Source of the DNA: Octopus sinensis
Taxonomy: Eukaryota
Assembly: GCF_006345805.1 (NCBI RefSeq)
Contig: NC_043001.1
Coordinates: 59,210,001 to 59,274,000 of the forward strand
DNA length: 64,000 nucleotides
Reading direction: 5' to 3'
Below the pieces are notes generated by a model. That model searched no databases. It worked only from the letters and a program-made list of their open reading frames with translations, and was not told the DNA's origin. The position numbers were made by a program, and so were the translations under genes. Position 1 is the first letter of the stretch. Each line of letters begins with the position of its first letter. This document shows, one piece after another, positions 231 through 64,000 of the stretch.

Positions 231-437
231 AAATTTAAATGTATAGAAAGCAAAAGACAGAGGCAGCTCATGGTACAACAACAAAGGTGTATTAGTTGGA
301 CGTTCAGGAAAAATTGAAAAGTCGTTGACGTTTCCAGCCTATGCTCTTCAACAGAAAAGCAAAAAGAAAAGAAACAGGAAACGTAGAATGAAAACAAAGC
401 GCATCTGAATTGATAGCTACATAGTAATATATTTATA

Positions 438-624
<187 letters not shown>

Positions 625-9609: not shown

Positions 9610-10049
9610 ATGACAGTCTTCATACACACACACACTAATACTAATATAGGTACGCTCAAGCATACACACTTATAAATATATATACATTCATACAGGTACA
9701 CACACACATATGTATATGCACATACATACGTGCATGCATACATACATACATACGTACATACATATATGCATACATACATACATACATACGTACATACATA
9801 TATGCATGCATACATACATACATATATACATACATACATACGTACATACATATATGCATGCATACATACATACATACACATACATACATACATACTACAT
9901 ACATACATACGTACATACATACATACATACATACATATATACATACATACATACGTACATACATACATACATATATACATACATACATACGTACATACAT
10001 ACATACTACATACATACATACATACTACATACATACATACATACATACA

Positions 10050-10083
<34 letters not shown>

Positions 10084-10135
10084 CATACATACATACATAT
10101 ATACATACATACATATATTCATACATATACATATG
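9610..10135. repeat. (TACA)n tract
   Basis: Direct reading. Confidence 0.9.
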
Positions 10136-11646: not shown

Positions 11647-14600
11647 GCCGACTACGGCTGCTATAATGGTACGATTATAATTGTAACGGCAATGATGGCC
11701 GTCTCCCCACGAGCCAATCAAAGCTCAAAAATGATAACATTATCGTAGCACCAAAATGTTTTTGGAAACTAAAAGGAAAACTAAATCAGCATACCAAATC
11801 GCTTGACCTATGGTTAATCTGGAAGCGCGTCCCCCAGGGAAGAGCCAGCCTGGGATCGAAAAGTCATCAACTGGCACAAACTCTTCTCCGAATACGGACA
11901 TGGATGGTCACTTGAACGGGAAACCCCCCAACTCGAGCCCTCCAAGTTCACCACCACAACCACCACAGAAAGAAAAATGTAAGCGGAACAAATGGACCCG
12001 AGAAGAGTATAAAGAAGTAATATACACTTATTACTATGCATTAGGTAGGCCATCTCAAGAGAGACACACCGCAAACTCTTACAGTATATGGAGAACACGG
12101 AATCAAGACAGTAGGCCCTATTTGGACGAGAACAAATTAGCAAATGTGAGGAGGGATATCCTTAGAAATAACAGGCTCACAGACAGTGAAATAAACGCGA
12201 TCAAGCACGAAACGGAAAATGACATAAATATAAGACACAAAGGAAATGAAGAATCAGATGAACAGTATAGCCCGACACGAGGCTTAATTGAAAGACTGCC
12301 ATCTGACTAAAGTACGCAAAGGCCTGAAGATACAAGAAATTCTATTGTACCTGTTAAAGATAGCCAGGAAAACGATAAAACAACAGTAACTGAAGATCTC
12401 GCATTTGCTGAAGAACAGAGAGTCTATGGCAGAAATTAGGCAGAAAATCCTGAATACGCTTGAAGTTGTAAGACATACAAGTATGAATGATAGAGAACCA
12501 CTTCATAAACTCTCAAATACAAACCATAATAAAAAAACAAATCCAAATTGGCAACTATGTAACAAATGAAATAATACAAGAATTAAAACCTGATTTTACT
12601 GAGTTAAATGAAATTATTTACGCTTCTGCTAGGGCAATTGAAACCAGCTGTATGCCCCCGAAAAAACAAAGAAAACCAAACCTGGGAAGAAATCAAACCT
12701 GGAGAAGTAAAATTGAAAAAGAGATTGAATTTATGAGAGGGGAAATATCAATATTAAATGAACTAATATGTGGAAATGATGTAAGATCCAGAACAGGAAG
12801 AAAGATGAAAAGAAAATTTGGATCCTTACCAAGAGAAGAACTGATATCAATAAAAGAAACGCTGAAACAAAAAGTCCAAACAAAAGCCTAAAGAATACGA
12901 AGATTTGAGGAGAGAAACAAGTTTTACAAGCAAAATAAGCTGTTCACATCCAATGCCAAAAAATCCTAGAGAAATAGGGAAGGAGAAAGTAACCGTTAAA
13001 GACACCCCTCCCATGGAAGAAGTTCAAAACTTTTGGAAAAGGATTTGGAGTGACAAGAAGACGTACAACATAAATGCAGACTGGATTATACAAACTGAAG
13101 GATCCTACCAAAATTTACAACAAGCATGGAAAGACATCGCAATAGCAAACCTAAGAAAAGCACTCACGAAGGCCCATAATTGGAAATCCCCCGGTAAAGA
13201 TAGGGTGCCGAATTTCTGGCTCGCATCGCTCCCATGCGCACACGGTAAGCTAGTTCAGCTGCTCAATGGAATTACGAGAGACCCAAAGAAAACACCTGAA
13301 TGGTTAGCAATTGGTATTATTTACCTACTCCCAAAGAATAACGAAACCAACCTTCCAAAAAACTATCGGCCTAAAACCTGCCTATCCATCACGTATAAAA
13401 TCCTAAGATCTATCCTGGCGGAGAAAACATATGCATTCATGGAGAAGAACGATATTTTCCCCTTTGAACGAAAAGGGTGCCGCCGAGGCTCTTACGGATG
13501 CAAAGATCAACTGCTAATTAATCGTATGATCCTCGAGAACTGTCACAACAAGCGCAGAAATCTCAGCGCCGCATGGATTGACTATAAAAAGGCATTCGAC
13601 AGTATACTGCATCCATGGATCTTGAGATCGTTGGACATCTTCAAAATTTCCCCTGTGATTTCAAACTTCCTGAAGCACAATATGTCGTTGTGGAATACGA
13701 ATCTCCAATTATACCACTCTAATGGAGTACTTGCCTCAGAAAATATAAACATCAACTGTGGAATTTTTCAAGGTGACTCACTTTCACCTCTAATATTCTG
13801 CATAGCCCTAATACCCCTTACAAGTGAATTAAACAGAACAGGGTATGGGTATAAAATTGCCAATAAAAAAATAAGCCATCTATTTTATATGGACGACTTA
13901 AAACTCTATGGTAAAGACAATAATGAACTTGAAGACCTATTGCGCACTGTGAAAGCATTCAGCGATGACATTGGGATGGAGTTTGGACTTGAGAAGTGTG
14001 CCAAGGCCACTTTCCAGAAAGGGAAAGTGAAGACCACAAATTCAGTCGTGTTAGATGTTGACACAGTCATAAGAGAGCTTGAGCAAGAACAAGCATACAA
14101 ATATTTAGGGATAAATGAAGGCTCTGGTATTCAGCATGCAAGCATGAAAGAGAAAATCAGGAAGAAATGTTATAGGAGAGTTCGTGCAGTCCTGAAATCT
14201 GAACTAAATGCATGTAACAAGGTGTTAGCTATAAATTCTTTAGTAGTTCCAGTTGTTACTTATAGTTACAATGTGTTGAACTGGAATATGAGTAAAGTAA
14301 AGAATATAGATAGGAAAATACGCAAGCTGCTGAGTTGTAATAGGATGCACCACCCAAAGGCAGACGTAGATCGCCTTTACATTCCCAGAGCCCAAGGAGG
14401 TCGAGGCCTGATCCAATTTGAACTAGCTTACAAAACAACCACAAGTGGTCTGGCCAAATATCTCGAAATATCGAATGACTGGATGCTAAAGCTCGTGGAA
14501 AATCACGAGAGACGAAAGAAGCTTCATTCTATCATAAAGGAAAGCAAAAAATTTGCTATTGATCTCGTGCACGATACCAAAACTGAACAACCCGAGGGAA

Positions 14601-15619
14601 GTACGGCAACTATTGCTGCAAAGAAGGCGAAAATAATGGCAACGAAAAAAGCGCACGAGCAATTGGCTGATAGGTGGGAGGAGAAACCTCCGCACGGCAA
14701 ATATGTGGCCCGCAGCAAACAAGCTGATGTTGACCAGAAGCAAACCCATCAGTGGCTACGGAGCTCAGGGCTAAAAGCAGAGAGCGATGGTTTCATCCTG
14801 GCTGCTCAAGATCAAAGCCTATTAACCCGGAACTACCAGGCCAATGTGATGAAAAATGGAGCAGACCCAAAATGCCGATTCTGCAACGACATGATTGAAA
14901 CAGTGGAACACCCAATCTCTGGATGTAAAGTCTTAGCCCCAGTGGAGTATAAATTAAGACATGACAGAGTTGGCCAATATCTACACTGGCTAATAAGTCG
15001 GTATTACAATATCAAAACTGCCGACAAGTGGTATAATCACCACCCTGAGGCTGTAACTGAAGGAGAAAATGTAACGATTCTGCGGGACTTTCCAGTACAT
15101 ACAGACCGAACCATCAAGGCCAATAAACCAGATATCGTTGTGAAAGACCAAAACAATAAAGTTTGCTTATTGATCGACATGAGCATCCCCTGTGATCATA
15201 ATATCTCAGCGAAAGAGTTTGACAAGCTCAGAAAAATATAAAGACCTACTCATTGAAATTGAGAAAATGTGGCATCTCAAGGCGGTTACAATACCAGTGA
15301 TCGTAGGAGCACTAGGAATGATCAAGAAGGGAACCGAAAATTATATGAGAATGATCCCTGGCTTACCATCCCTGCAAGAAGTGCAAAATATTGTCTTAAC
15401 TGGTACATCACACGTATTGAGAAGAGCATTGTCAATGTGAGAACTGTTGCTGCTCATGTATTTTAATTTAACTTAAAAAAAAAGGAAAAAAAAAAAGAAA
15501 GTGAACGAACTATTGAGTTTAGTTTAATGGCCTACCAATGTATACTATGAGTTTCTTTGCCCTAGGAGTCGGGAAGACACTCGGCAAGAAATGGAAGCAA
15601 ATTTGAAAGAAGAAAAAAA
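11647..15619 (+). mobile_element. Near-full-length R4/Dong-like non-LTR retrotransposon with restriction-like endonuclease, inserted in TAA repeats
   Basis: N-terminal Myb-like segment (KRNKWTREEYKEV...LANVRRDILRN), RT (QGDSLSPL, YMDD), CCHC knuckle (CRFC...EH...GC), RLE (KPDIVV...IDMSIP...KYKDL) and the C-terminal VIVGALG motif. TAA repeats flank both sides. The 5' boundary is approximate. Confidence 0.88.
11810..15440 (+). pseudogene. Disrupted single ORF (Myb-like - RT - CCHC - RLE) of the R4/Dong-like element
   Basis: Track ORFs 11810-12310, 12487-12891, 12905-15241 and 15192-15440 are collinear pieces of one protein. They are broken by stops (12308, 12889) and frameshifts (~12420, ~12530, ~12965, ~15237). 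Confidence 0.85.
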
Positions 15620-39019: not shown

Positions 39020-39620
<601 letters not shown>

Positions 39621-40125
39621 TGTTATGATTCAGTGCGATCGTGAGATTGAGAATAGGAAGCCGGACAGATGTTATGATTCAGTGCGATCGTGAGATTGAG
39701 AATAGGAAGCCGGACAGATGTTATGATTCAGTGCGACCATGAGATTGAAAATAGGAAGCCGGACAGTCATACTTGAAAAACAAAACAATGCTGGATCATA
39801 GATATAGCATGCCCAGCTGACAACAAGATATGCGATAAGGAAGATAGAAAAGTCAAGAGATATGACAGGCTAGCTTGTGAAGTTAAGCAGTTGTGGTCGA
39901 TGAAAAAGGTAGCAGTAGTACCAATAATTGTCGGAGCCCTGGGAACAGTGAGCAAAAATTTCGAGAAGTACGTGGAACAAATAGGGGTTGCAATAAGGGT
40001 GGAGCATTTGCAGAAAATTGCACTGTTTGGAACTGCTTGAATACTCCGGAAGGTGCTCGAAAAATGAGAGGTAGTGAACAGCTGACACTGTAGTACATCT
40101 TCAGCGTTAGATGCGCAAAAGCAAT
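39621..40125 (+). mobile_element. 3' stub of an R4/Dong-like element (RLE C-terminus) with a 49-bp triplication at its 5' end
   Basis: QCDHEIENRKPD...WIIDIACP...RYDRLACEVKQLW.MKKVAVVPIIVGALGTVSK; followed by aataaa and (CAA)n/(TAA)n. Confidence 0.8.
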
Positions 40126-45603: not shown

Positions 45604-48600
45604 TCATAGAATCATAGTCAAGGTGGCTTCGTCATTCATACGTGCCATCCTTGCTACATTCACCCATCTTTTTTTAAAACATTCACTAGACAAAACTTGC
45701 CTCTCTACTCTCACTTTTTTCTTCAAGTGATACTTGAAGAAGTTGATGAGAGATTGACCAGAGAGGAAAGTGTTTGTCTCTAATCCTTTCAGACGCGTCC
45801 ACCAGATACATTCTTTCGCCATAGCCACAAGTATGATAAAAATAGCTCTTCCTTCCCGTTTGAAGGAAGGAGGCGTGACGATATTAACGATAGACTCGGC
45901 TGATAAACCGACACGTCCCACACGTGACAGCAGTCGTTCGACATAAGCCCACAGGTGGGAAATTGCTGGACACTGCACGATTGCGTGCAGAGCGGTTTCG
46001 TCGCTCTGCCCGCATCTCGGGCAGGTCGGCCCCGTGTTTCTCGAGCCATGCCTATAGAGCTTATCCCGAACGGGTAGCGCTTCTCGGTAGCACCGCCAGG
46101 CCAGGGATCTCTGGAAGTTGTCCATAGGTCCCGGGCCGAAAGTTGTTTGAAACAGGCGGGTCAGGTATTCCTCGTCGACGCCCAGGTTTGCCCCGAGCTC
46201 GTCGTCGTACCTCCCCTCCACTAATCCCCTATAGAGTGCTTTGGTTGTGTTGAAGTCACTCAAGGTCGACCCGGGACGGCAGAGTTGCTTGAGAGCAACG
46301 TGACACTCGCGGTGCCATTCGCCCTTCTTCGGCCTCTTTTTGATCCACGACTGTAGTTCGGTCATGGAGACGAGTTGCGGGAATGCGTGCCTCACAAACG
46401 GCGACCACACCTGTTCACCGTCGTCTACATAGAGCCGGAGATGTCGCAGTCTCAGCGCGTGTCTGCGCATCATCAACCACGGCATGCCCAGCCCTCCTTT
46501 TAACGGGTGTTGACAGCAAATGGATCGCCTGACCATCGGGACGCATCCATTCCACAAGAAGCGGAAGAGGATGCGTTCTAGTTTGGTGATGGTAGGGTCG
46601 GGACAAGGTACGACGGTCAGGCGGTAGTAGATGATGGACGCGATGTACGCGTTCACCACCTCCGCCCGACCTTTTAGGGACAGTTTCCTCTCGGCCCATT
46701 GCTGGGCGAGAGTGACCACCCTACTCGTTATCTCGTTCCAGTTCTTCTCCATTTGGAGGTCCGGACCGAACCAGACCCCGAGCAACTCAACCGGGCCGTC
46801 TGTCCAGCGTCCCACGACGGAGGTACTGGTGGACGGCATGGGTTTGCTTCTCCAGGTGCCGAGCCGCAAGCCCACTGACTTTTCCCGGTTGATTTTTGCT
46901 CCTGTCACCGCTTCGTAGTCTTTCAGTGTCTCGCCGACCCGCTCGATGTGCTCGTGGCTTGACACTATGACGGTGACGTCGTCCGCGTATGCAGACACGC
47001 TCGTCCCGCATCCTAATTCTCGCGGGATGCCCCTCAGAGTCGCCAGCTTCCGCAGTAGTGGCTCAAGAGTCAATACGTATAGAAGCGCCGAGAGGGGGCA
47101 TCCCTGACGGACCGAACGTGCAATGTCGAAGGGTCTCGATAGATGTCCATTTACGCGAATTACCGAACGGATGCCTCTGTACAAGGCAGCTATCCAGCCG
47201 CGGAAGACGGGACCGAAACCAGCCGCTCTCAGGACTGCCTCCAAGTATCGATGGTCTACCCTATCAAAGGCTTTCGATTGATCCAAGTTGATCAGGGCCC
47301 CACCCATGCCAGGTTCGTTAACTACCCTGTCTATGATGTAGCGCATCAGATGGAGGTTGTCATGGATGCTCCGGCCCGGCACGGCGCACGTTTGTGCGTT
47401 GTCGACCAGTTTCTCCATGACAAGCGCCAACCTCTTGGCTAACACCTTTGTCAAAATTTTCAGGTCTGCATTGAGCAGAGTGATTGGCCTAAAGTTATCT
47501 ATAATGTTTCCCTTGTTTGGATCTTTCTTCAGCAGAGTTACAGCTCCTCGACTCACAAAACGGGTATGCTCCCGTTTTGCTGCCAGTTGCAGTATACCGC
47601 TGCCGAGACGTCTCCAAACAAGTCTGGCATACAATAGTAAAATTCGTAGGGTAGACCATCCAAACCCGGTGATTTGTCCCTCGAGCATTCTGCCATCGCT
47701 TCCCGCACTTCCGCCGCCGTGATGGCACCTTCGCAGCACCCTGCCTTTCTTGTCGAGAGTCGTGGCAGGCTATGTAGGTAGGCACTGAAGTCTACCCTAC
47801 GTTCTTGCCCTCCACTCGTCCCGAACAGTCGGGCAAAGTGCTGCTGAAAGGCCTCACACATTTTACTTGGCTCGAGCAATTCGCGCCCCTGTTCATCTAC
47901 CAGTGACCGAATGGTGGCTTTGTTGCCCTGTTGCGCCTCTGCCACCCGGGCCTCTCTCGCGGCTCCAACACCTTCGTTCCTTAGAGCACGCATCCTAGCT
48001 CTGACAGCACATCCTTCGTGTTTGGCGTTGAAGTGTTGGTCGAGGGCCAACCTCGCCGCCAAAACGTAGGATGCGATGCCGCTTCTAATTGCCTCTTCTA
48101 GCTTCTTAACTAGCTCACCCTCTACTCTATTTCTATCTATGGCTAGTGCTTTGCTGTACCTAATCGCTTCTGCTTTTACTGCTCTCTTGAGGGCAAACCA
48201 CCATTTGTTGTTGATGATGGCTCCCGTCAAAGCCCTCTTTACTAGTGTGCTAATCCGGTCTCTGAAAACTTGTCTGGACGGGAATGATGCGTTCAGTTTC
48301 CAGTACCCAGGACCCTGTCTATGTGCCTTATCTAAGTCTAGCGTACACGTCACCAATTTGTGATCCGTGTAGCTGACTGTGTGGAATTGTGGACATCCTA
48401 AGTTATCCTTGTCTACTGTCCTACACAGTATCCTATCTAGATACGATCTCGACGACCCACTGCGGTTGCTCCATGTCCACGTTGGTGCATTTGGGTGGTC
48501 GAGTCGGTACCTGTCAGACAGTTGGAATCGTCTGAGCAGGTCTCTGAGGCATTTGCATCCCCTTCTGTTTCTGTCTCTACCCACGTAGTCTACATGCGTG

Positions 48601-49040
48601 TCCAAGGTAGCATTCCAATCCCCCACTAAGAGTAAAGGACGAGACGTTCCCAAGAATACTTCTAGACGTCGAAAGAAATCCGCCCGACCTGTTAAGGGCG
48701 GTGCGTAGACTGATACGAGTCGAAAAGCGCACCCATTGCTGCCGTCAACATCCAGAACGATCAGTCTACCCTCCGGGTCTACGAATATCGTCTTGACTTC
48801 GAGATCCAGGCTCTTGTGAAAAAGTACCGCGGTGCCACTACCGCCCATCCTCGGCAGACAGGGAGCGAAATAAATGTTAAACTGTCCGCCAAACATGGAC
48901 TTTAGGGCCCGTGGCTCGTGGAGTCTGGTCTCACTTATGGCTATGATTCCCAAATCATGTGACTTGATGTCATTTAGGAGGTATCCTTGTTTCCAAGGAG
49001 ACCCCAAGCCACGCGCATTCACACAACCAATCTTGACCAT
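45604..49040 (-). CDS. ORF2: APE endonuclease - reverse transcriptase - C-terminal zinc knuckle, one frameshift at ~47563
   Basis: APE motifs NARGL, ISET, YAP, GDWN and TDH; PGYWKLN; RT motifs KSPGLDG, FRPITLLN, DQSKAFD, RQGCPLS and YADD; CPRC...H...C knuckle. Restoring one C gives IPRFVSRG and a 1145-aa ORF. Confidence 0.9.
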
Positions 49041-49090
49041 GATTCTATTGGGGTGTGTGCTTTAAAACACACAAATGAAAGTACAGAGAG

Positions 49091-50808
49091 TTACTTACTT
49101 GTGTCGAAAGTTTTGGCTTCCTCGTTCTTTGATGTGTCTTCGAGGAGGTTTCTATATAGTTTTTGGGACAGATATTTCTGGAAACCCCCTACAGCATTTG
49201 GGAAGAGGGCTTTGAGTTTGTGGTGTTGTGTTTGTGTGATGTGTAGTATTTTGATGTGTTTGGGTGGTGTAGTGCGTGGATGATTGCTATTTTTAAAGTC
49301 ATCTTCACAAATGTTTGTGTATCCTGTGATGTACTCCATTAGTTTGGAGTCTTTTGTGTCTATCGCTGATAGCATTGTTTTTGTGGTGTTGGTGCTTGTT
49401 TTGTTGTGTATGGAGTTTTCAGGGTTCAGGTATCTCCCTGCTTTGGTTGCGATTTCTTGTTTGGTTTTTCTTGATCTTTTTCTTTTACCCCCTGTGGCTA
49501 TTTGCCATTCTGTCGAACTTTCATCGTTAGATGAAAAGTCTGACGAATCAGCAGGGGGCAAGGGTAAAGCGTCTGGGTGTGTTTGTGCGGTTGTAGATAT
49601 TGTTGTGGTGCGCGGGGAGGGTGTTGCTGGGGGGTTTGTTGTGGTTATTGTCTCTCCTACATCCTTGGTGCTTGTCTTCTTCGTTGTTATTCTTGGTGTT
49701 GGAATTGGTTTATTTGTTGTTGGTGGTGATGATTCTGTTCTTGGCGCTGGTGTTGGTGTTGTTTGGTTGGGTTGGTTTGTTCTTTGTTGTTTTTCCTGCA
49801 TTTCCGCATACAGCTTCTTGACTAGCTGTCCATATTGTGGTGTGGGCAATAATCCTGGCTTTTGTGATTTTTCCTGTGGCTGTTGTTGTTGTAATTTTGC
49901 GGCAGATTTGCACTCCTTTTTGAGGTGTGCCTCACTGCCACATGTATAGCATCGTGGCCTTCTGCCCTCGACTACTACGTATAACTTGCGGCCATCCTCA
50001 AGATGTACGTGGGTGGGGATTTTATTTATGTCCTCTTGACTTATGTGGAAGAGGAACTCTATTCTCTTTCCCAGCCAGTCCTTGTTTTCCGAAACACCGA
50101 TATCTAGGATGTTTATGTCCTCCATTTCGGATGTTACGGCGGATGTAATCCACAGTGTTGTAGTCACTTGGGGGACACCACTGATAATGACTTTCGTCAC
50201 CTTCTGGCCGAGGTAACTCGGTGTCAACGTTAGTTCATCAGAATGAAGGGTTATCGTTGAGAATTTCTTCGCCAACTCTTCATTCTGAAAAACCACCTGT
50301 ACGTGTGCGAACTTGTTCGCCCAAGTCACACAATCCTTGTATCCCCAGATGGGGCGTAAGCACTTTTCGACTTTGTCTGTGCTTGCCTTTTCTGGACTTT
50401 TTGTTTTTTTATTTGTGATTTTATATACAATTGTCTTTTTTTTCTCCTCATTCAGTATGTGCTGAGGTATGTGTAAGAGTATTTTTCCGTTTTGATTTGT
50501 AATAAGGTTTCTGCAATCTTAATCTGTTGTGTAGTAAACGAAACTTTTGTTACCTTTTCTTTTATCGCCTCGGCGAAGTTGTTGTTGTTTTGTTATTGTT
50601 GTTACTGTTGATGTTGATGGCAGGGGTGTGGGTTGTAGGTTTGTGGTTGCTGATTATGCAACTAGCAAGGGGTGGAAAATTGCCTGCGTAATTTAGTCCT
50701 GCATTAGCGCAAATTTCGGCATTTCGTTTGCTTGTCGTCGTTATTTTTTCACTTGTTGGTGATGGAGTGAGCAGTGGTTGAAGGGAATTGTTGTTGTCGT
50801 CGTCGTCG

Positions 50809-54788: not shown

Positions 54789-55287
54789 CTAGCAGTATCG
54801 CCCGGCGTTGCTCGGGTTTGTAAGGGAAATAACTATATAAGCATTTTTAAAGAGTTATACCCAAAAAATAGCAAAAAAATGCATTAAAAATGGAAAAAAA
54901 ATTATGGTAAATTTTTTTTAAATCGTTGACTTATCGTAGACATTTTTAGAGAGTTACTTCCCTTATATAATAGCGAAAAAATGTAATAAAATGGAAAAAA
55001 AATTATGGTAAATTTTTTTTAAATCGTTGACTTATCGTAGACATTTTTAGAGAGTTACTTCCCTTATATAATAGCGAAAAAATGTAATAAAATGGAAAAA
55101 ATTGATAGTAAATTTCTTTTAAAATCGTAGATTCATCGTAGACGCGCGCTAATACCCAGAAGGGCTCGATATGAATCACGACTATAAGATACCCGGTTTT
55201 GGGTAAACTGCACCGCAAAATGTGGAGGAGTTAGGAATCTAAATCGTAGGGGACAGACACACAGCTTCTCTTTTATATATATAAAGA
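54789..55287 (-). mobile_element. Non-autonomous Helitron-like element (499 bp) with an internal ~101-bp tandem repeat
   Basis: Minus strand A|TCTTTATATATATAAAAG...cccgagcaacgccggg-cgatactg-CTAG|T; internal repeat at 54921 and 55022 plus a partial copy; inserted in (TA)n. Confidence 0.8.
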
Positions 55288-56614: not shown

Positions 56615-56906
56615 TCTATCGGAGTAATTGCGCTAAGCAGTGTTTACGTATAATCACAGTTTAGGTTAGTTATATATGTTTGTCACATATTTCAACCGCT
56701 AAAGGCAAATACACTGCAGTTACCATAGAGAAAAAATACCTCTTTTGGTAAAAAGGTGTGAAAACACACCGTTCGTTCAATGTCTCCCTCTGTCGGCTAT
56801 CTCAAACATCGACGTTTCGAATTTATTGACTCTTGTCGATGAGATATATCGAAGAGAGACAACCCTGAAGTTACTGATAAAGCTTATAGCTATATATATA
56901 ATTCAT

Positions 56907-56946
<40 letters not shown>

Positions 56947-57162
56947 TCAATATAGGGTGGCAAAAAATTTTGTAGAATTTTTTGCCACCAGCGGCCTAGT
57001 GGGAAAAATTAAATAGTCATAGACCATTTTTAAGTTCAACATCACAATCAAGGAACGGCCATAATAGGCCATTCACCCACTAGAAATAACAGCCAAAGCT
57101 TCAACCGCAAATAAACATCAATTCCGTAAACCAGGAGAAAATTAAAAAACATTTACCCTGTA

Positions 57163-57269
57163 ATTTCTTATACGATGCACCGTTTCATCTACTGTTTAAT
57201 GGTAAACTAACCTGATTAAATTAAATCAAGCCAATCTTCCATAGGCCCTTAGAATCATCAGTAAGAAAT
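57163..57269 (-). ncRNA. Type I hammerhead ribozyme motif in the inverted arm of array 1
   Basis: Reverse complement of the motif described for 57990-58096. Confidence 0.78.
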
Positions 57270-57503
57270 AGCCAAGTCGGAACAGATATTTTCACGAGGC
57301 ATTTCCGGCCATGTCCGACCCTGCCTCGGCAATATCTGACCTAAAATTTTCAAATCGTCGCACTCGCGCCAAATTTATCGGCGGCTTATATTTATTTGCT
57401 GCCGATAAATTTGGCGCGAGTGCGATGATTTGAAAATTTTAGGTCAGATATTGCCGAGGCAGGGTCGGAAATGCCTCGTGAAAATATCTGTTCCGACTTG
57501 GCT

Positions 57504-57609
57504 ATTTCTTACTGATGATTCTAAGGGCCTATGGAAGATTGGCTTGATTTAATTTAATCAGGTTAGTTTACCATTAACAGTAGATGAAACGGTGCATCGT
57601 ATAAGAAAT
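57504..57609 (+). ncRNA. Type I hammerhead ribozyme motif, array 1 unit 1 (predicted cleavage after 57601)
   Basis: ATTTCTTA-CTGATGA-tTCTA...TAGAt-GAAA-CGG tgca TCG-TA-TAAGAAAT. Confidence 0.8.
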
Positions 57610-57989
57610 TACAGGGTAAATGTTTTTTAATTTTCTTCTGGTTTACGGAATTGATGTTTATTTGCGGTTGAAGCTTTGGCTGTTATTTCTAGTGGGTGAA
57701 TGGCCTATTATGGCCGTTCCTTGATTGTGATGTTGAACTTAAAAATGGTCTATGACTATTTAATTTTTTCCCACTAGGCCGCTGGTGGCAAAAAAATTCT
57801 ACAAAATTTTTTGCCACACTATATTGATTAATTATGAATTTTCTGGTTAGTTCCGTAATGGAATCGGCGGCTTATATTTATTTGCTGCCGATAAATTTGG
57901 CGCGAGTGCGATGATTTGAAAATTTTAGGTCAGATATTGCCGAGGCAGGGTGGGAAATGCCTCGTGAAAATATCTGTTCCGACTTGGCT

Positions 57990-58096
57990 ATTTCTTACTG
58001 ATGATTCTAAGGGCCTATGGAAGATTGGCTTGATTTAATTTAATCAGGTTAGTTTACCATTAAACAGTAGATGAAACGGTGCATCGTATAAGAAAT
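57990..58096 (+). ncRNA. Type I hammerhead ribozyme motif, array 1 unit 2 (predicted cleavage after 58088)
   Basis: Stem I ATTTCTTA/TAAGAAAT (8 bp); core CUGAUGA 57998-58004; 68-nt stem II domain closed by U.U then TCTA/TAGA; GAAA 58073-58076; stem III ACGG/TCGT with TGCA loop; GUA triplet. Confidence 0.8.
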
Positions 58097-58475
58097 TACA
58101 GGGTAAATGTTTTTTAATTTTCTCCTGGTTTACGGAATTGATGTTTATTTGCGGTTGAAGCTTTGGCTGTTATTTCTAGTGGGTGAATGGCCTATTATGG
58201 CCGTTCCTGATTGTGATGTTGAACTTAAAAATGGTCTATGACTATTAATTTTTTTCCCACTAGGCCGCTGGTGGCAAAAAAATTCTACAAAATTTTTTGC
58301 CACCCTATATTGATTAATTATGAATTTTCTGGTTAGTTCCGTAATGGAATCGGCGGCTTATATTTATTTGCTGCCGATAAATTTGGCGCGAGTGCGATGA
58401 TTTGAAAATTTTATGTCAGATATTGCCGAGGCAGGGTCGGAAATGCCTCGTGAAAATATCTGTTCCGACTTGGCT

Positions 58476-59552
58476 ATTTCTTACTGATGATTCTAAGGGC
58501 CTATGGAAGATTGGCTTGATTTATTTAATCAGGTTAGTTTACCATTAAACAGTAGATGAAACGGTGCATCGTATAAGAAATTACAGGGTAAATGTTTTTT
58601 AATTTTCTCCTGGTTTACGGAATTGATGTTTATTTGCGGTTGAAGCTTTGGCTGTTATTTCTAGTGGGTGAATGGCCTATTATGGCCGTTCCTTGATTGT
58701 GATGTTGAACTTAAAAATGGTCTATGACTATTTAATTTTTTCCCACTAGGCCGCTGGTGGCAAAAAAATTCTACAAAATTTTTTGCCACCCTATATTGAT
58801 TAATTATGAATTTTCTGGTTAGTTCCGTAATGGAATCGGCGGCTTATATTTATTTGCTGCCGATAAATTTGGCGCGAGTGCGATGATTTGAAAATTTTAG
58901 GTCAGATATTGCCGAGGCAGGGTGGGAAATGCCTCGTGAAAATATCTGTTCCGACTTGGCTATTTCTTACTGATGATTCTAGGGCCTATGGAAGATTGGC
59001 TTGATTTAATTTAATCAGGTTAGTTTACCATTAAACAGTAGATGAAACGGTGCATCGTATAAGAAATTACAGGGTAAATGTTTTTTAATTTTCTCCTGGT
59101 TTACGGAATTGATGTTTATTTGCGGTTGAAGCTTTGGCTGTTATTTCTAGTGGGTGAATGGCCTATTATGGCCGTTCCTTGATTGTGATGTTGAACTTAA
59201 AAATGGTCTATGACTATTTAATTTTTTCCCACTAGGCCGCTGGTGGCAAAAAAATTCTACAAAATTTTTTGCCACCCTATATTGATTAATTATGATTTTC
59301 TGGTTAGTTCCGTAATGGAATCGGCGGCTTATATTTATTTGCTGCCGATAATTTGGCGCGAGTGCGATGATTTGAAAATTTTAGGTCAGATATTGCCGAG
59401 GCAGGGTGGGAAATGCCTCGTGAAAATATCTGTTCCGACTTGGCTATTTCTTACTGATGATTCTAAGGGCCTATGGAAGATTGGCTTGATTTAATTTAAT
59501 CAGGTTAGTTTACCATTAAACAGTAGATGAAACGGTGCATCGTATAAGAAAT
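58476..59552 (+). ncRNA. Three further hammerhead motifs in array 1 (58476-58581, 58962-59067, 59446-59552)
   Basis: Same core and stems; predicted cleavage after 58573, 59059 and 59544. Confidence 0.8.
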
Positions 59553-59671
59553 TACAGGGTAAATGTTTTTTAATTTTCTCCTGGTTTACGGAATTGATGT
59601 TTATTTGCGGTGAAGCTTTGGCTGTTATTTCTAGTGGGTGAATGGCCTATTATGGCCGTTCCTTGATTGTG

Positions 59672-59714
59672 ATATATATATATATATATATATATACACT
59701 CACACTCACACACA

Positions 59715-59761
<47 letters not shown>

Positions 59762-59788
59762 ATATATATATATATAATATATATATAT

Positions 59789-59866
<78 letters not shown>

Positions 59867-60166
59867 TAGATAAAAATTTCTGGGAAATGGACGCGTAGCA
59901 TTCAATCATATATTAATATAAATTATATGTATATGCATACATATATATATATATGCATGTATACATACATATAAGTACATTCTTACATATATATGCATAT
60001 ACACATGCATATATGGTTATAGGACGTCATAGAATGTAAGCAAAATGAAATACGAATATGAAAACATGGAATATGAACTTGTTTTGCGAACGAAAGAATC
60101 AAATGGAAAACAAGATAAGCAACATAAAGAACGACCCTTCATCAGTTGCCGGCTGTTTTATCTACT

Positions 60167-60228
<62 letters not shown>
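59672..60228. repeat. Inter-array spacer: (TA)(CACT)(CA)(TA)(GATA) microsatellites, ~300 bp unique sequence, (CA)(TA)
   Basis: Direct reading; the opening (TA)n-cactcacactcac motif recurs after array 2 at 63924-64000. Confidence 0.85.
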
Positions 60229-60234
<6 letters not shown>

Positions 60235-60450
60235 TCAATATAGGGTGGCAAAAAATTTTGTAGAATTTTTTGCCACCAGCGGCCTAGTGGGAAAAATTAA
60301 ATAGTCATAGACCATTTTTAAGTTCAACATCACAATCAAGGAACGGCCATAATAGGCCATTCACCCACTAGAAATAACAGCCAAAGCTTCAACCGCAAAT
60401 AAACATCAATTCCGTAAACCAGGAGAAAATTAAAAAACATTTACCCTGTA

Positions 60451-60557
60451 ATTTCTTATACGATGCACCGTTTCATCTACTGTTTAATGGTAAACTAACC
60501 TGATTAAATTAAATCAAGCCAATCTTCCATAGGCCCTTAGAATCATCAGTAAGAAAT
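60451..60557 (-). ncRNA. Type I hammerhead ribozyme motif in the inverted arm of array 2
   Basis: Reverse complement of the unit motif. Confidence 0.78.
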
Positions 60558-60781
60558 AGCCAAGTCGGAACAGATATTTTCACGAGGCATTTCCGACCCT
60601 GCCTCGGCAATATCTGACCTAAAATTTTCAAATCGTCGCACTCGCGCCAAATTTATCGGCGGCTTATATTTATTTGCTGCCGATAAATTTGGCGCGAGTG
60701 CGATGATTTGAAAATTTTAGGTCAGATATTGCCGAGGCAGGGTCGGAAATGCCTCGTGAAAATATCTGTTCCGACTTGGCT

Positions 60782-63700
60782 ATTTCTTACTGATGATTCT
60801 AAGGGCCTATGAAGATTGGCTTGATTTAATTTAATCAGGTTAGTTTACCATTAAACAGTAGATGAAACGGTGCATCGTATAAGAAATTACAGGGTAATGT
60901 TTTTTAATTTTCTTCTGGTTTACGGAATTGATGTTTATTTGCGGTTGAAGCTTTGGCTGTTATTTCTAGTGGGTGAATGGCCTATTATGGCCGTTCCTTG
61001 ATTGTGATGTTGAACTTAAAAATGGTCTATGACTATTTAATTTTTTCCCACTAGGCCGCTGGTGGCAAAAAAATTCTACAAAATTTTTTGCCACACTATA
61101 TTGATTAATTATGAATTTTCTGGTTAGTTCCGTAATGGAATCGGCGGCTTATATTTATTTGCTGCCGATAATTTGGCGCGAGTGCGATGATTTGAAAATT
61201 TTAGGTCAGATATTGCCGAGGCAGGGTGGGAAATGCCTCGTGAAAATATCTGTTCCGACTTGGCTATTTCTTACTGATGATTCTAAGGGCCTATGGAAGA
61301 TTGGCTTGATTTAATTTAATCAGGTTAGTTTACCATTAAACAGTAGATGAAACGGTGCATCGTATAAGAAATTACAGGGTAAATGTTTTTTAATTTTCTC
61401 CTGGTTTACGGAATTGATGTTTATTTGCGGTTGAAGCTTTGGCTGTTATTTCTAGTGGGTGAATGGCCTATTATGGCCGTTCCTTGATTGTGATGTTGAA
61501 CTTAAAAATGGTCTATGACTATTTAATTTTTTCCCACTAGGCCGCTGGTGGCAAAAAAATTCTACAAAATTTTTTGCCACCCTATATTGATTAATTATGA
61601 TTTTCTGGTTAGTTCCGTAATGGAATCGGCGGCTTATATTTATTTGCTGCCGATAAATTTGGCGCGAGTGCGATGATTTGAAAATTTTATGTCAGATATT
61701 GCCGAGGCAGGGTCGGAAATGCCTCGTGAAAATATCTGTTCCGACTTGGCTATTTCTTACTGATGATTCTAAGGGCCTATGGAAGATTGGCTTGATTTAA
61801 TTTAATCAGGTTAGTTTACCATTAAACAGTAGATGAAACGGTGCATCGTATAAGAAATTACAGGGTAAATGTTTTTTAATTTTCTCCTGGTTTACGGAAT
61901 TGATGTTTATTTGCGGTTGAAGCTTTGGCTGTTATTTCTAGTGGGTGAATGGCCTATTATGGCCGTTCCTTGATTGTGATGTTGAACTTAAAAATGGTCT
62001 ATGACTATTTAATTTTTTCCACTAGGCCGCTGGTGGCAAAAAAATTCTACAAAATTTTTTGCCACACTATATTGATTAATTATGAATTTTCTGGTTAGTT
62101 CCGTAATGGAATCGGCGGCTTATATTTATTTGCTGCCGATAAATTTGGCGCGAGTGCGATGATTTGAAAATTTTAGGTCAGATATTGCCGAGGCAGGGTG
62201 GGAAATGCTCGTGAAAATATCTGTTCCGACTTGGCTATTTCTTACTGATGATTCTAAGGGCCTATGGAAGATTGGCTTGATTTAATTTAATCAGGTTAGT
62301 TTACCATTAAACAGTAGATGAAACGGTGCATCGTATAAGAAATTACAGGGTAAATGTTTTTTAATTTTCTCCTGGTTTACGGAATTGATGTTTATTTGCG
62401 GTTGAAGCTTTGGCTGTTATTTCTAGTGGGTGAATGGCCTATTATGGCCGTTCCTTGATTGTGATGTTGAACTTAAAAATGGTCTATGACTATTTAATTT
62501 TTTCCCACTAGGCCGCTGGTGGCAAAAAAATTCTACAAAATTTTTTGCCACCCTATATTGATTAATTATGAATTTTCTGGTTAGTTCCGTAATGGAATCG
62601 GCGGCTTATATTTATTTGCTGCCGATAAATTTGGCGCGAGTGCGATGATTTGAAAATTTTATGTCAGATATTGCCGAGGCAGGGTCGGAAATGCCTCGTG
62701 AAAATATCTGTTCCGACTTGGCTATTTCTTACTGATGATTCTAAGGGCCTATGGAAGATTGGCTTGATTTAATTTAATCAGGTTAGTTTACCATTAAACA
62801 GTAGATGAAACGGTGCATCGTATAAGAAATTACAGGGTAAATGTTTTTTAATTTTCTCCTGGTTTACGGAATTGATGTTTATTTGCGGTTGAAGCTTTGG
62901 CTGTTATTTCTAGTGGGTGAATGGCCTATTATGGCCGTTCCTTGATTGTGATGTTGAACTTAAAAATGGTCTATGACTATTTAATTTTTTCCCACTAGGC
63001 CGCTGGTGGCAAAAAAATTCTACAAAATTTTTTGCCACCCTATATTGATTAATTATGAATTTTCTGGTTAGTTCCGTAATGGAATCGGCGGCTTATATTT
63101 ATTTGCTGCCGATAAATTTGGCGCGAGTGCGATGATTTGAAAATTTTAGGTCAGATATTGCCGAGGCAGGGTGGGAAATGCCTCGTGAAAATATCTGTTC
63201 CGACTTGGCTATTTCTTACTGATGATTCTAAGGGCCTATGGAAGATTGGCTTGATTTAATTTAATCAGGTTAGTTTACCATTAAACAGTAGATGAAACGG
63301 TGCATCGTATAAGAAATTACAGGGTAAATGTTTTTTAATTTTCTCCTGGTTTACGGAATTGATGTTTATTTGCGGTTGAAGCTTTGGCTGTTATTTCTAG
63401 TGGGTGAATGGCCTATTATGGCCGTTCCTTGATTGTGATGTTGAACTTAAAAATGGTCTATGACTATTTAATTTTTTCCCACTAGGCCGCTGGTGGCAAA
63501 AAAATTCTACAAAATTTTTTGCCACCCTATATTGATTAATTATGAATTTTCTGGTTAGTTCCGTAATGGAATCGGCGGCTTATATTTATTTGCTGCCGAT
63601 AAATTTGGCGCGAGTGCGATGATTTGAAAATTTTAGGTCAGATATTGCCGAGGCAGGGTGGGAAATGCCTCGTGAAAATATCTGTTCCGACTTGGCTATT

Positions 63701-63803
63701 TCTACTGATGATTCTAAGGGCCTATGGAAGATTGGCTTGATTTAATTTAATCAGGTTAGTTTACCATTAAACAGTAGATGAAACGGTGCATCGTATAAGA
63801 AAT
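60782..63803 (+). ncRNA. Seven hammerhead motifs in array 2 (starts 60782, 61266, 61752, 62237, 62724, 63211, 63698)
   Basis: Same core and stems; predicted cleavage after 60879, 61364, 61850, 62335, 62822, 63309 and 63795. The last copy has a 1-nt deletion in stem I. Confidence 0.8.
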
Positions 63804-63953
63804 TACAGGGTAATGTTTTTTAATTTTCTCCTGGTTTACGGAATTGATGTTTATTTGCGGTTGAAGCTTTGGCTGTTATTTCTAGTGGGTGAATGGCCTA
63901 TTATGGCCGTTCCTTGATTGTGATATATATATATATATATATATACACTCACA

Positions 63954-64000
<47 letters not shown>

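What the first reader, a model, noticed from the sequence alone, without database searches (positions are those of the whole stretch)
56941..63923. Tandem ~487-nt repeats each carrying a complete type I hammerhead ribozyme: a retrozyme-like circular-RNA element
Seen: every unit contains ATTTCTTA-CUGAUGA-[68-nt stem II domain closed by U.U + UCUA/UAGA]-GAAA-CGG(UGCA)UCG-UA-UAAGAAAU. That gives the full hammerhead core (C3-A9, G12-A14, A15.1-U16.1, H17=A), a perfect 8-bp stem I and a short stem III with a palindromic loop. There are 14 copies (12 on +, 2 on -), and predicted GUA cleavage sites are 485-487 nt apart. The unit has no stable ORF. Established: tandem non-coding repeats with type I hammerheads (non-LTR retrozymes; newt, schistosome and cricket satellite RNAs) are transcribed as multimers, self-cleave to monomers and can circularise. 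Short stem III hammerheads with palindromic loops work as dimers in Penelope-like elements. Inference: this is a cephalopod retrozyme family with an unusually long monomer and an unusually large, branched stem II. I do not recognise it as a described family, but I cannot search databases. The U10.1.U11.1 pair in place of the usual G-C may reduce activity.
Basis: partly seen in the sequence, partly recalled or inferred. Interest (0 to 1): 0.95.

Follow-up and report, generated by a model that had tools for sequence, protein, structure and literature searches.

The report
Tandem repeat carrying hammerhead ribozyme motifs
A 487-base non-coding repeat, present 14 times at the end of this animal (probably octopus-like) genome window, carries in every copy the full signature of a self-cutting "hammerhead" RNA; it looks like a new member of the known retrozyme family of small circular-RNA mobile elements, not a new kind of element.

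Summary
There are two tandem arrays (57377-59673 and 60655-63924; unit 485-487 nt), each preceded by an inverted 439-nt partial copy. They carry 14 copies (12 on +, 2 on -) of a motif with every conserved hammerhead core nucleotide, an 8-bp stem I, a 68-nt stem II arm and a short stem III with a palindromic loop. A relaxed descriptor is rare in random sequence (5 hits in 40 Mb, none with an 8-bp stem I). The unconstrained minimum-energy fold of a transcript spanning two units is a textbook double hammerhead. All genome-level retrozyme features that I could test are met: 37% GC, no ORF, a highly self-paired monomer.

The monomer length is ordinary (published range 51-972 bp). Stem II is predicted unbranched. 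U10.1.U11.1 is a documented natural variant that still cleaves.

Against the interpretation: no Rfam hammerhead model matches, no homologues were found, so there is no covariation, and cleavage and circular RNA are untested.

The locus is one insertion that was later duplicated. It sits in (TA)n with an inverted 5'-truncated copy, the architecture typical of Penelope-like element insertions.

Verdict: a new member of a known kind, of moderate interest.

The parts
56891..56941 (.). (TA)n microsatellite directly abutting the left end of macro-copy 1 (putative target)
56941..57376 (-). Inverted 5'-truncated unit of macro-copy 1 (consensus positions 283..487..234, about 439 nt, holds one complete hammerhead motif); carries a private 10-nt insertion near 57305-57316
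57163..57269 (-). Hammerhead motif in inverted copy 1 (A17 at 57171)
57377..57406 (+). Unit hairpin ATCGGCGGC-N12-GCTGCCGAT whose stem holds the inversion junction of macro-copy 1
   Evidence: spurious miRNA-like Rfam hits on the resulting long palindrome
57377..59673 (+). Direct tandem array 1, 4.7 units of 485-487 nt, five hammerhead motifs
57504..57609 (+). Hammerhead motif (1-nt deletion in stem II arm)
57990..58096 (+). Representative hammerhead: stem I 5' strand 57990-57997; C3-A9 CUGAUGA 57998-58004; stem II arm 58005-58072 (U10.1 58005, U11.1 58072); G12 A13 A14 58073-58075; stem III A15.1-CGG 58076-58079, loop UGCA 58080-58083, UCG-U16.1 58084-58087; A17 58088; predicted cleavage 58088|58089; stem I 3' strand 58089-58096
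58476..58581 (+). Hammerhead motif (1-nt deletion in stem II loop)
58962..59067 (+). Hammerhead motif (1-nt deletion in stem II internal loop)
59446..59552 (+). Hammerhead motif
59672..59745 (.). Right flank of macro-copy 1: (AT)n ACACTCACACTCACA (CA)n; the same sequence follows macro-copy 2
60201..60229 (.). (TA)n abutting the left end of macro-copy 2; homology between the macro-copies starts inside it
60230..60654 (-). Inverted 5'-truncated unit of macro-copy 2, same junction and same private A>G variant as copy 1
60451..60557 (-). Hammerhead motif in inverted copy 2 (A17 at 60459)
60655..63924 (+). Direct tandem array 2, 6.7 units, seven hammerhead motifs; the order of unit variants equals array 1 plus two extra units
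60782..60887 (+). Hammerhead motif (1-nt deletion in stem II arm)
61266..61372 (+). Hammerhead motif
61752..61858 (+). Hammerhead motif
62237..62343 (+). Hammerhead motif
62724..62830 (+). Hammerhead motif
63211..63317 (+). Hammerhead motif
63698..63803 (+). Hammerhead motif with a 1-nt deletion in the stem I 5' strand (ATTTCTA)
63923..64000 (.). Right flank of macro-copy 2, (AT)n ACACTCACACTCACA (CA)n, running to the window end

Best explanation
The locus is a non-LTR retrozyme-type element: a non-coding 487-nt unit repeated head to tail, each unit encoding a type I hammerhead ribozyme on the + strand. Inferred mechanism: the array is transcribed as a multimer. Neighbouring ribozymes pair through the self-complementary 12-nt segment ACGGUGCAUCGU to form a long shared helix III. 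Each stem I forms between the 5' strand of one unit and the 3' strand of the neighbour. [quoted passage not shown] In a monomer or a circle only a marginal stem III hairpin can form, which would protect the circle from re-cleavage. The genomic structure is (TA)n, an inverted 5'-truncated unit, 4.7 or 6.7 direct units, then (TA)n. That is the footprint expected from target-primed reverse transcription of a circular or multimeric template by a Penelope-like (or LINE twin-priming) machinery. This single insertion was later duplicated as a block of about 3.3 kb, and one array gained or lost two units. Shown here: the sequence anatomy, its improbability by chance, the predicted folds and the history of the locus. 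Inferred: transcription, cleavage, circularisation and the mode of integration.
For: There are 14 copies of the complete core (C3-A9, G12-A14, A15.1-U16.1, A17) with an 8-bp stem I, against 0 in shuffles. In 40 Mb of random sequence with the unit's composition, a relaxed descriptor gave 5 hits, none with stem I of 8 bp or more; with the window's composition it gave 0. Real-world matches to the core plus the stem II base in about 10^12 bases of metagenomes and viral contigs all lack stems I and III. The unconstrained MFE of the monomer forms stem I and the stem II arm. The unconstrained MFE of a 594-nt two-ribozyme transcript (-189.0 kcal/mol) is exactly a double hammerhead with the core nucleotides unpaired, against -178.1 with two single stem III hairpins. 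The stem III hairpin gives -1.2 and the dimer duplex -19.5 kcal/mol. Retrozyme features are met: tandem units, 37% GC, no ORF above 67 aa, 64% of bases paired, z = -4.8 linear and -6.2 circular. These match the definition in PMC7229834. The U.U pair at the base of helix II occurs in axolotl HHR_Amex2, which cleaves 22% per hour as a monomer and efficiently as a dimer; it is also the best-tolerated mismatch. Inverted 5'-truncated copies, partial tandems and a (TA)n target preference are described for PLE insertions, and dual hammerheads 100-700 bp apart on opposite strands are reported at PLE sites.
Against: No Rfam hammerhead model (types I, II, III, HH9, HH10) matches at gathering score or at E <= 10. 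The 68-nt insertion in helix II plausibly explains this, but that could not be tested. The most conserved helix-closing pair, G10.1-C11.1, is replaced by U.U. Stem I has no loop 1 and no recognisable helix I-II tertiary motif. Copies are 98-99% identical and variable sites are not depleted in the ribozyme (about 3 of 15), so there is no sign of selection and no covariation. No related sequence was found elsewhere in the window or in the public collections. Only one locus, itself duplicated, is seen, so mobility is not shown. No PLE lies in the window. The isolated 107-nt segment has an alternative fold 3.4 kcal/mol more stable than the single-hammerhead fold.
Confidence: 0.72

Rival explanations
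1. The hammerhead is genuine by descent (for example derived from a Penelope-like element's terminal repeat or an old retrozyme), but this locus is now an inert minisatellite. It was amplified only at the DNA level by unequal crossing-over and segmental duplication. The ribozyme is crippled by U10.1.U11.1, the 68-nt helix II and the missing loop 1, and no circular RNA is made.
For: The two arrays are duplicates of one structure and differ by a two-unit step, which is DNA-level dynamics. The inversion junction lies in the stem of the unit's own short inverted repeat, as expected for fold-back priming or template switching during DNA repair. No variation pattern indicates selection on the ribozyme. 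Rfam models do not recognise it. PLE-type minimal hammerheads show low activity in vitro.
Against: All 14 copies keep an intact core. The dimer fold is the global MFE and leaves the core free. U.U variants are active in axolotl. The mussel ribozymes lack the canonical tertiary motifs yet still cleave and yield abundant circles.
Confidence: 0.2
2. Chance resemblance: an ordinary AT-rich satellite whose unit happens to contain CUGAUGA and GAAA with flanking complementarity. There is no ribozyme ancestry or activity.
For: The hammerhead consensus is short and chance matches are expected in large genomes (Perreault et al. 2011, discussion). My descriptor was relaxed after the fact to allow a 90-nt helix II and any 10.1/11.1 pair. 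Rfam finds nothing. Matches to the core plus the stem II base do occur by chance in large collections.
Against: The expected number of chance matches in a 487-nt unit on both strands is about 1e-4 or less, and below about 7e-5 for an 8-bp stem I. The chance hits in the collections lack stems I and III. Three features not required by the descriptor also fit metazoan retrozyme hammerheads: a palindromic loop III giving a 12-bp dimer helix, the tandem context that yields unit-length products, and U.U as the specific mismatch.
Confidence: 0.08

Closest known systems
Axolotl non-LTR retrozymes with HHR_Amex2 (Cervera & de la Pena 2020, PMC7229834)
   Same: Tandem AT-rich non-coding units, each with a type I hammerhead. 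U.U mismatch at the base of helix II. Short helix III capped by a tetraloop. Far better predicted (here) or measured (axolotl) performance as a dimer. Highly self-paired monomer.
   Different: The unit is 487 nt against 350 nt. Helix II is a 68-nt imperfect hairpin rather than a short stem-loop. Stem I is a plain 8-bp helix with no loop 1. No sequence similarity was tested. Activity and circles are shown for axolotl but not here.
Mytilus galloprovincialis retrozymes (same paper)
   Same: Probably the same phylum (Mollusca). Repeats of 350-390 bp with type I hammerheads that lack the archetypal loop 1-loop 2 nucleotides yet still cleave and give abundant circular RNA.
   Different: Different unit length and helix II. 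About 5000 copies are documented genome-wide in the mussel, whereas only one duplicated locus is visible here.
Newt satellite 2 / HHR_Amex1 and the double-hammerhead model (Forster et al. 1988, cited)
   Same: Weak helix III with a palindromic loop, so that two tandem ribozymes share an extended helix III. This is exactly what the MFE of a two-unit transcript gives here.
   Different: The newt motifs have a 1-bp helix III, G10.1-C11.1 and conserved loop-loop contacts. Here helix III has 3-4 potential pairs and helix II is very long.
pDo500 satellite of Dolichopoda cave crickets (PMC2837043, listed)
   Same: A satellite DNA family carrying a hammerhead ribozyme in its unit (title and abstract start). 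The unit length of about 500 bp is from my memory and the family name, not from a text I read here; if right, a 487-nt monomer has a precedent.
   Different: Arthropod family, with no known sequence relation. I did not compare its hammerhead with this one.
Penelope-like element insertions and their pLTR hammerheads (PMC4209133, PMC8557442; bioRxiv 10.64898/2026.07.22.740005)
   Same: Insertion architecture: partial tandems, an inverted 5'-truncated copy at the upstream end, insertion into (TA)n, and hammerheads on opposite strands a few hundred bp apart. Retrozymes are proposed to be non-autonomous PLE derivatives.
   Different: No RT/GIY-YIG ORF in or near the array. The ribozyme is not the PLE 'min-HHR' type, which has no helix III, a bulged base between 9 and 10.1, G10.1-C11.1, a helix II of 6-8 bp and a helix I of 4-5 bp. 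No 30-40-bp 'tail' is seen.

Membership tests
Hammerhead ribozyme, type I | Conserved core: C3 U4 G5 A6 N7 G8 A9, G12 A13 A14, A15.1-U16.1, H17 | tested here: met
   CUGAUGA ... GAAA ... U-A present and unchanged in all 14 copies
Hammerhead ribozyme, type I | Three helices around the core, open end at helix I | tested here: met
   8-bp stem I, stem II (U.U plus 4 bp, then an extended arm), stem III of 3-4 bp plus tetraloop. The descriptor finds them and the stems appear in unconstrained MFE folds
Hammerhead ribozyme, type I | G10.1-C11.1 pair closing helix II | tested here: not met
   U10.1.U11.1 in every copy. This is a documented natural exception and the best-tolerated mismatch
Hammerhead ribozyme, type I | Tertiary contacts between helix I (loop 1) and helix II (loop 2) | tested here: inconclusive
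   No internal loop in the 8-bp stem I. Helix II has internal loops 5-7 pairs from the core that might substitute. The mussel ribozymes also lack the canonical nucleotides. These tools cannot evaluate 3D contacts
Hammerhead ribozyme, type I | Match to a curated covariance model (Rfam Hammerhead_1, _3, _II, HH9, HH10) | tested here: not met
   No hit at gathering score over the window or at E <= 10 over 56900-59700. The 68-nt helix II is a likely cause, but this was not tested
Hammerhead ribozyme, type I | Covariation in the helices among homologues | tested here: inconclusive
   Copies are 98-99% identical. No diverged copy in the window and none in the public collections
Hammerhead ribozyme, type I | Mg2+-dependent self-cleavage 3' of H17 | not testable with these tools
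   Needs in vitro transcription of monomer and dimer constructs
Non-LTR retrozyme (metazoan) | Head-to-tail repeats of a few hundred bp, each with a type I hammerhead | tested here: met
   4.7 and 6.7 units of 485-487 nt, one motif per unit. Published range is 150-450 bp and 51-972 bp
Non-LTR retrozyme (metazoan) | Low GC (below 45-50%) | tested here: met
   37% GC
Non-LTR retrozyme (metazoan) | Non-coding, without LTRs | tested here: met
   ORFs of at most 67 aa with inconsistent frames. The longest has no homologue. The array has no terminal direct repeats other than the unit itself
Non-LTR retrozyme (metazoan) | Monomer or circular RNA predicted to be stable and highly self-paired, with the hammerhead free to fold | tested here: met
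   -149 kcal/mol, 64% paired, z -4.8 (linear) and -6.2 (circular). Stems I and II are present and the core is unpaired
Non-LTR retrozyme (metazoan) | Expressed as monomeric linear and circular RNA | not testable with these tools
   No transcriptome access
Non-LTR retrozyme (metazoan) | Many dispersed arrays in the genome, co-existing with Penelope-like elements | tested here: inconclusive
   Only one locus, duplicated in place, in 64 kb. No PLE ORF in the window, only APE-type LINEs. The insertion architecture is PLE-like
PLE minimal hammerhead (min-HHR) | No helix III or only palindromic 15.2-16.2; extra base between 9 and 10.1; G10.1-C11.1; helix II 6-8 bp; helix I 4-5 bp; located in the pLTR of an RT/GIY-YIG element | tested here: not met
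   Helix III hairpin present, U.U at 10.1/11.1, 68-nt helix II, 8-bp helix I, no adjacent PLE ORF

The most novel reading that the evidence does not exclude
This locus may preserve, unusually cleanly, the integration footprint of a non-LTR retrozyme. The footprint has four parts: insertion into (TA)n; two outward-facing ends that both fall 11-12 nt after the start of a TTGATT motif; an inverted 5'-truncated copy joined to the direct array by the microhomology of the unit's own 9-bp inverted repeat; and several rounds of the unit. Together these would be direct structural evidence that retrozyme circles or multimers are copied by twin-primed (PLE-type or LINE-type) target-primed reverse transcription. 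The element's ribozyme would also be an obligate double hammerhead with a 68-nt helix II arm, a helix II far longer than the 4 bp (canonical) to 7-8 bp (PLE type) described for metazoan hammerheads in the papers I read.
Probability: 0.3. Interest if true: 0.55.

Novelty: new member of a known kind. Interest (0 to 1): 0.4.

Why it matters
If active, this would add a probable cephalopod lineage to the animals that make ribozyme-processed small circular RNAs. I found no paper in the searched library linking hammerheads or retrozymes to a cephalopod element. It would also be a natural hammerhead that tolerates U10.1.U11.1 together with a 68-nt helix II, which is useful for defining how much peripheral variation the motif accepts and why covariance-model searches miss such copies. 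The locus architecture offers a testable clue about which retrotransposon machinery integrates retrozymes. None of this changes the current picture of retrozymes; it extends it.

Tried and rejected
1. Rfam at gathering score and at E <= 10 gave no ribozyme family. The only strong hits (mir-8515, MIR5070 and others at 57325-57458, both strands) are artefacts of the long perfect palindrome made by the inversion junction.
2. Exact look-ups of window ORFs, to find the source genome or other copies, found nothing on record: LINE endonuclease ORF, 42-aa and 34-aa repeat ORFs.
3. A protein search with the 67-aa ORF read through the repeat, used as a handle for related repeats, gave no candidate.
4. 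A metagenome scan for the 27-mer spanning stem III and stem I gave 0 hits. Scans for core plus stem II base with free stems I and III gave 6 metagenome and 4 viral loci. These are three unrelated coding or phage sequences without stems I and III, so I rejected them as relatives and kept them as an empirical null.
5. blastn and nhmmer of the consensus against window 1-56890 found no diverged copies.
6. Organism identification: the first LINE gave only 64% hits, with shrimp and coral names; the second gave Argonauta hians at 65% and cuttlefish at 37%. The closest hit (72%) lies in assembly GCA_024449705.1, whose organism I could not resolve.
7. I considered a penaeid shrimp origin because of the microsatellite load. 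About 10% of the window is in repeats of period 6 or less. This is not decisive, and the second LINE favours a cephalopod.
8. I rejected two independent insertions as the origin of the two arrays: they share the same junction, a private variant, the same unit-variant order and the same downstream flank.
9. The minus strand of the direct units carries no hammerhead, so this is not a viroid-like element with ribozymes in both polarities.

Full report
**Observation.** The last 7 kb of the window hold two tandem arrays of the same unit: 57377-59673 (period 486, 4.7 copies, 98% matches) and 60655-63924 (period 487, 6.7 copies, 99%). The motif CTGATGA-N67/68-GAAACGGTGCATCGTA occurs 14 times, 12 on the + strand and 2 on the - strand, and never in shuffled sequence. 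The predicted cleavage sites (after the A of GTA) are 485-487 nt apart. The 487-nt consensus is 37% GC. Ten full monomers differ at only 15 alignment columns. Most of these are single-base indels, largely in short base runs, that look like assembly noise; none touches the core. ORFs in the unit are at most 67 aa and shift frame between units.

**Anatomy of the motif** (representative copy 57990-58096):
- Stem I 5' strand: AUUUCUUA.
- C3-A9: CUGAUGA.
- Helix II domain: 68 nt, starting with U10.1 and ending with U11.1.
- G12 A13 A14.
- Helix III: A15.1-C-G-G, loop UGCA, U-C-G-U16.1.
- A17, with predicted cleavage at 58088|58089.
- Stem I 3' strand: UAAGAAAU.

All conserved core positions are present in all 14 copies. 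One copy (63698-63803) has lost a U from stem I. The helix II domain folds (-22.1 kcal/mol) as an unbranched, imperfect hairpin. From the core outwards it has 4 bp, an AG/AG loop, a G-C pair, a 4x4 loop, 4 bp, an A.A mismatch, and 14 bp including five G.U pairs, closed by a hexaloop. "Branched" is not supported. The + strand is 60% G+T and its monomer MFE contains 24 G.U pairs. The + strand RNA folds to -149 kcal/mol and the - strand to -107. Both are well below their shuffles, with z about -5.

**Is it more than chance?** I wrote a deliberately relaxed type I descriptor: any 10.1/11.1 pair, helix II domain up to 90 nt, helix II of at least 3 bp, helix III of at least 2 bp, stem I of at least 4 bp with G.U allowed. 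In the window it finds only these copies. In 40 Mb of random sequence with the unit's dinucleotide composition it found 5 matches, none with a stem I of 8 bp or more. In 40 Mb with the window's composition it found none. That is about 1e-4 or less per 487-nt unit on both strands. As a real-world control, the pattern "core plus stem II base" (CTGATGATTCTA-N50-75-TAGATGAAAC) does occur in about 10^12 bases of metagenomic and viral contigs. Those hits are three unrelated sequences, and none has the stem III hairpin or the stem I complement. A chance motif in an ordinary satellite is therefore unlikely, though not impossible given that a whole genome was screened.

**Fold predictions.**
- The unconstrained MFE of the monomer (cleavage to cleavage), linear or circular, forms the 8-bp stem I as the helix that closes the whole molecule, and it forms the helix II arm. 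64% of bases are paired.
- The helix III hairpin alone is marginal (-1.2 kcal/mol). The 12-nt segment ACGGUGCAUCGU is self-complementary and gives a -19.5 kcal/mol duplex between two copies.
- Most tellingly, the unconstrained MFE (-189.0 kcal/mol) of a 594-nt transcript running from one ribozyme to the next is exactly the "double hammerhead". It has a 12-bp helix III between the two units, stems I formed crosswise between the units, and both helix II arms. CUGAUGA, GAA and A17 are left single-stranded. Forcing two separate helix III hairpins costs 11 kcal/mol.
- This is the arrangement described for newt and other metazoan type I hammerheads with short helix III and palindromic loops. It is thought to allow cleavage in multimers while sparing monomeric circles.
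- These are thermodynamic predictions, not demonstrations.

**Evidence against.**
- No Rfam hammerhead model matches, at gathering score or at E <= 10 on a 2.8-kb slice. A 68-nt insertion in helix II, U.U at 10.1/11.1 and a weak helix III would all cost score, but I could not test a trimmed copy.
- G10.1-C11.1 is the most conserved helix pair, and it is absent here. Perreault et al. report natural hammerheads that start helix II with U10.1.U11.1 and note it is the best-tolerated mismatch. The axolotl retrozyme motif HHR_Amex2, with about 60,000 copies, has the same mismatch; it cleaves 22% per hour as a monomer and efficiently as a dimer.
- Stem I has no loop 1, so the usual loop-loop contacts are not recognisable. 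The mussel retrozyme ribozymes also lack them and still work.
- The copies are too similar to show selection or covariation.
- I found no relative anywhere: not in the rest of the window, not by exact ORF look-ups, not by a protein search with the repeat's longest ORF, and not in metagenome or viral scans.

**Comparison with retrozymes.** Cervera & de la Pena define metazoan non-LTR retrozymes as follows:
- short tandem repeats (150-450 bp, from dimers to large multimers);
- low GC;
- a type I hammerhead in each unit;
- no LTR, PBS or PPT;
- expression as highly self-paired linear and circular RNAs;
- co-existence with Penelope-like elements.

A 2026 preprint reports consensus lengths of 51-972 bp, with 75% of families having at most seven units per array. 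The present element meets every feature that can be read from DNA. Its 487-nt unit and 4.7 or 6.7 copies are ordinary for the class. Expression, cleavage, circularisation and dispersal cannot be tested here.

**History of the locus.**
- Each array is headed by an inverted copy covering consensus positions 283-487-234 (about 439 nt, including a whole ribozyme).
- The switch from inverted to direct orientation lies in the stem of the unit's own hairpin, ATCGGCGGC-N12-GCTGCCGAT.
- The two "macro-copies" share this junction, a private A>G change next to it, and the same outer ends. They also share the downstream flank, (AT)n ACACTCACACTCACA (CA)n, as far as the window end, but nothing upstream of the (TA)n tract.
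- The order of unit variants in array 2 equals that of array 1 plus two extra units.
- The simplest history is one original structure, a segmental duplication of about 3.3 kb probably mediated by the flanking (TA)n tracts, and one two-unit unequal exchange.

**Architecture of the original structure.** It is (TA)n, an inverted 5'-truncated unit, direct units, then (TA)n. Partial tandems, an inverted 5'-truncated copy at the upstream end and a preference for (TA)n are the hallmarks described for Penelope-like element insertions. Hammerheads 100-700 bp apart on opposite strands were noted at such sites. Both outer ends lie 11-12 nt after the start of a TTGATT motif (TTGATTGTGAT| and TTGATTAATTAT|), with 2-3 nt of microhomology to TA. 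About 1.6% of comparable position pairs in the unit would share such a motif. This fits twin-primed reverse transcription of a circular or multimeric RNA, with the two cDNAs joined through the hairpin's microhomology. A DNA-level fold-back at the same short inverted repeat would give the same junction, and a single ancestral event cannot tell the two apart. The window contains no PLE. Its reverse transcriptases are APE-type LINEs, which are also capable of twin priming (my knowledge of L1 biology, not tested here).

**Organism.**
- One LINE (12905-15241) has only 64% relatives, with shrimp and coral among the few named ones.
- The other LINE (45604-47739) has its best named relative in the octopod Argonauta hians (65% over 91%), plus a cuttlefish hit.

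A cephalopod, probably an octopod, is the best guess. In the searched library no paper connects hammerheads or retrozymes with a cephalopod element. The only co-occurrence is a PLE survey that mentions cephalopod Naiad remnants.

**Verdict.** This is a real, well-formed hammerhead-bearing tandem repeat that fits the known class of metazoan non-LTR retrozymes. It most likely works as a double hammerhead in multimeric transcripts. It is a new member of a known kind. Its individual traits are the 68-nt helix II arm combined with U10.1.U11.1, and a cleanly preserved insertion architecture. The class is widespread and species-specific variants are expected. The "unusual" length is not unusual. Activity, circular RNA and mobility remain untested.

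Noticed in passing
window 45604-50329 (- strand): Apparently full-length LINE. ORF1 (49091-50329, weak zf-CCHC hit), APE-type endonuclease ORF (47553-49040) and RT plus zf-RVT ORF (45604-47739), the last two overlapping in different frames. The best named relative is in the octopod Argonauta hians (65%).
   Followed up: partly
window 11810-15241 (+ strand): Second LINE-type element with a 778-aa RT ORF (12905-15241) preceded by two short ORFs. The closest database relatives are only 64% identical, and the named ones are from Penaeus shrimps and a coral.
   Followed up: partly
window 7295-7798 (- strand): Fragment of a third reverse transcriptase (RVT_1, E = 2e-11).
   Followed up: no
window 57325-57458 and the equivalent junction near 60610-60730: The inversion junction creates a long near-perfect palindrome that draws sub-threshold Rfam 'miRNA precursor' hits on both strands (mir-8515 at 69.8 bits, MIR5070 and others). 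These are hairpin artefacts, not miRNA genes.
   Followed up: yes
window 57305-57316: A 10-nt insertion (around TCCGGCCATG) is present in inverted copy 1 and absent from inverted copy 2. Apart from a one-base offset at the arbitrary start of the slice compared, it is the only difference between the two inverted copies.
   Followed up: partly
consensus positions 120-130 and 223-234; window ends 59662-59672, 63913-63923, 56942-56953, 60231-60242: Both outward-facing ends of the insertion fall 11-12 nt after the start of a TTGATT motif and abut (TA)n with 2-3 nt of microhomology. About 1.6% of comparable position pairs would do this by chance. It may be a preferred cDNA initiation site.
   Followed up: partly
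window 57602-63795: Unit variants at four columns follow the same order in both arrays (TAGG, CCTC, [CAGG, CCTC,] CCGG, CCGG). Array 2 is therefore array 1 plus two units. Many single-base indels in short base runs suggest long-read assembly noise.
   Followed up: yes
whole window: Very heavy simple-repeat load: 21% of the window lies in TRF repeats and about 10% in repeats of period 6 or less. Examples are (TGA)n of about 390 bp at 39137-39529, (ACAT)n at 9720-10127 and (TA)n at 2401-2646.
   Followed up: partly
window 54842-55143 and 39621-39766: Two other minisatellites: a 101-bp unit in 3 copies (90% matches) and a 49-bp unit in 3 copies (96%). Neither is related to the 487-nt unit.
   Followed up: no
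L005, L006, L009-L013 (metagenome and IMG/VR contigs): A conserved 81-nt stretch in several related phage-like contigs happens to contain CTGATGATTCTA...TAGATGAAAC. It has no stem I or stem III complement and is not a hammerhead.
   Followed up: yes
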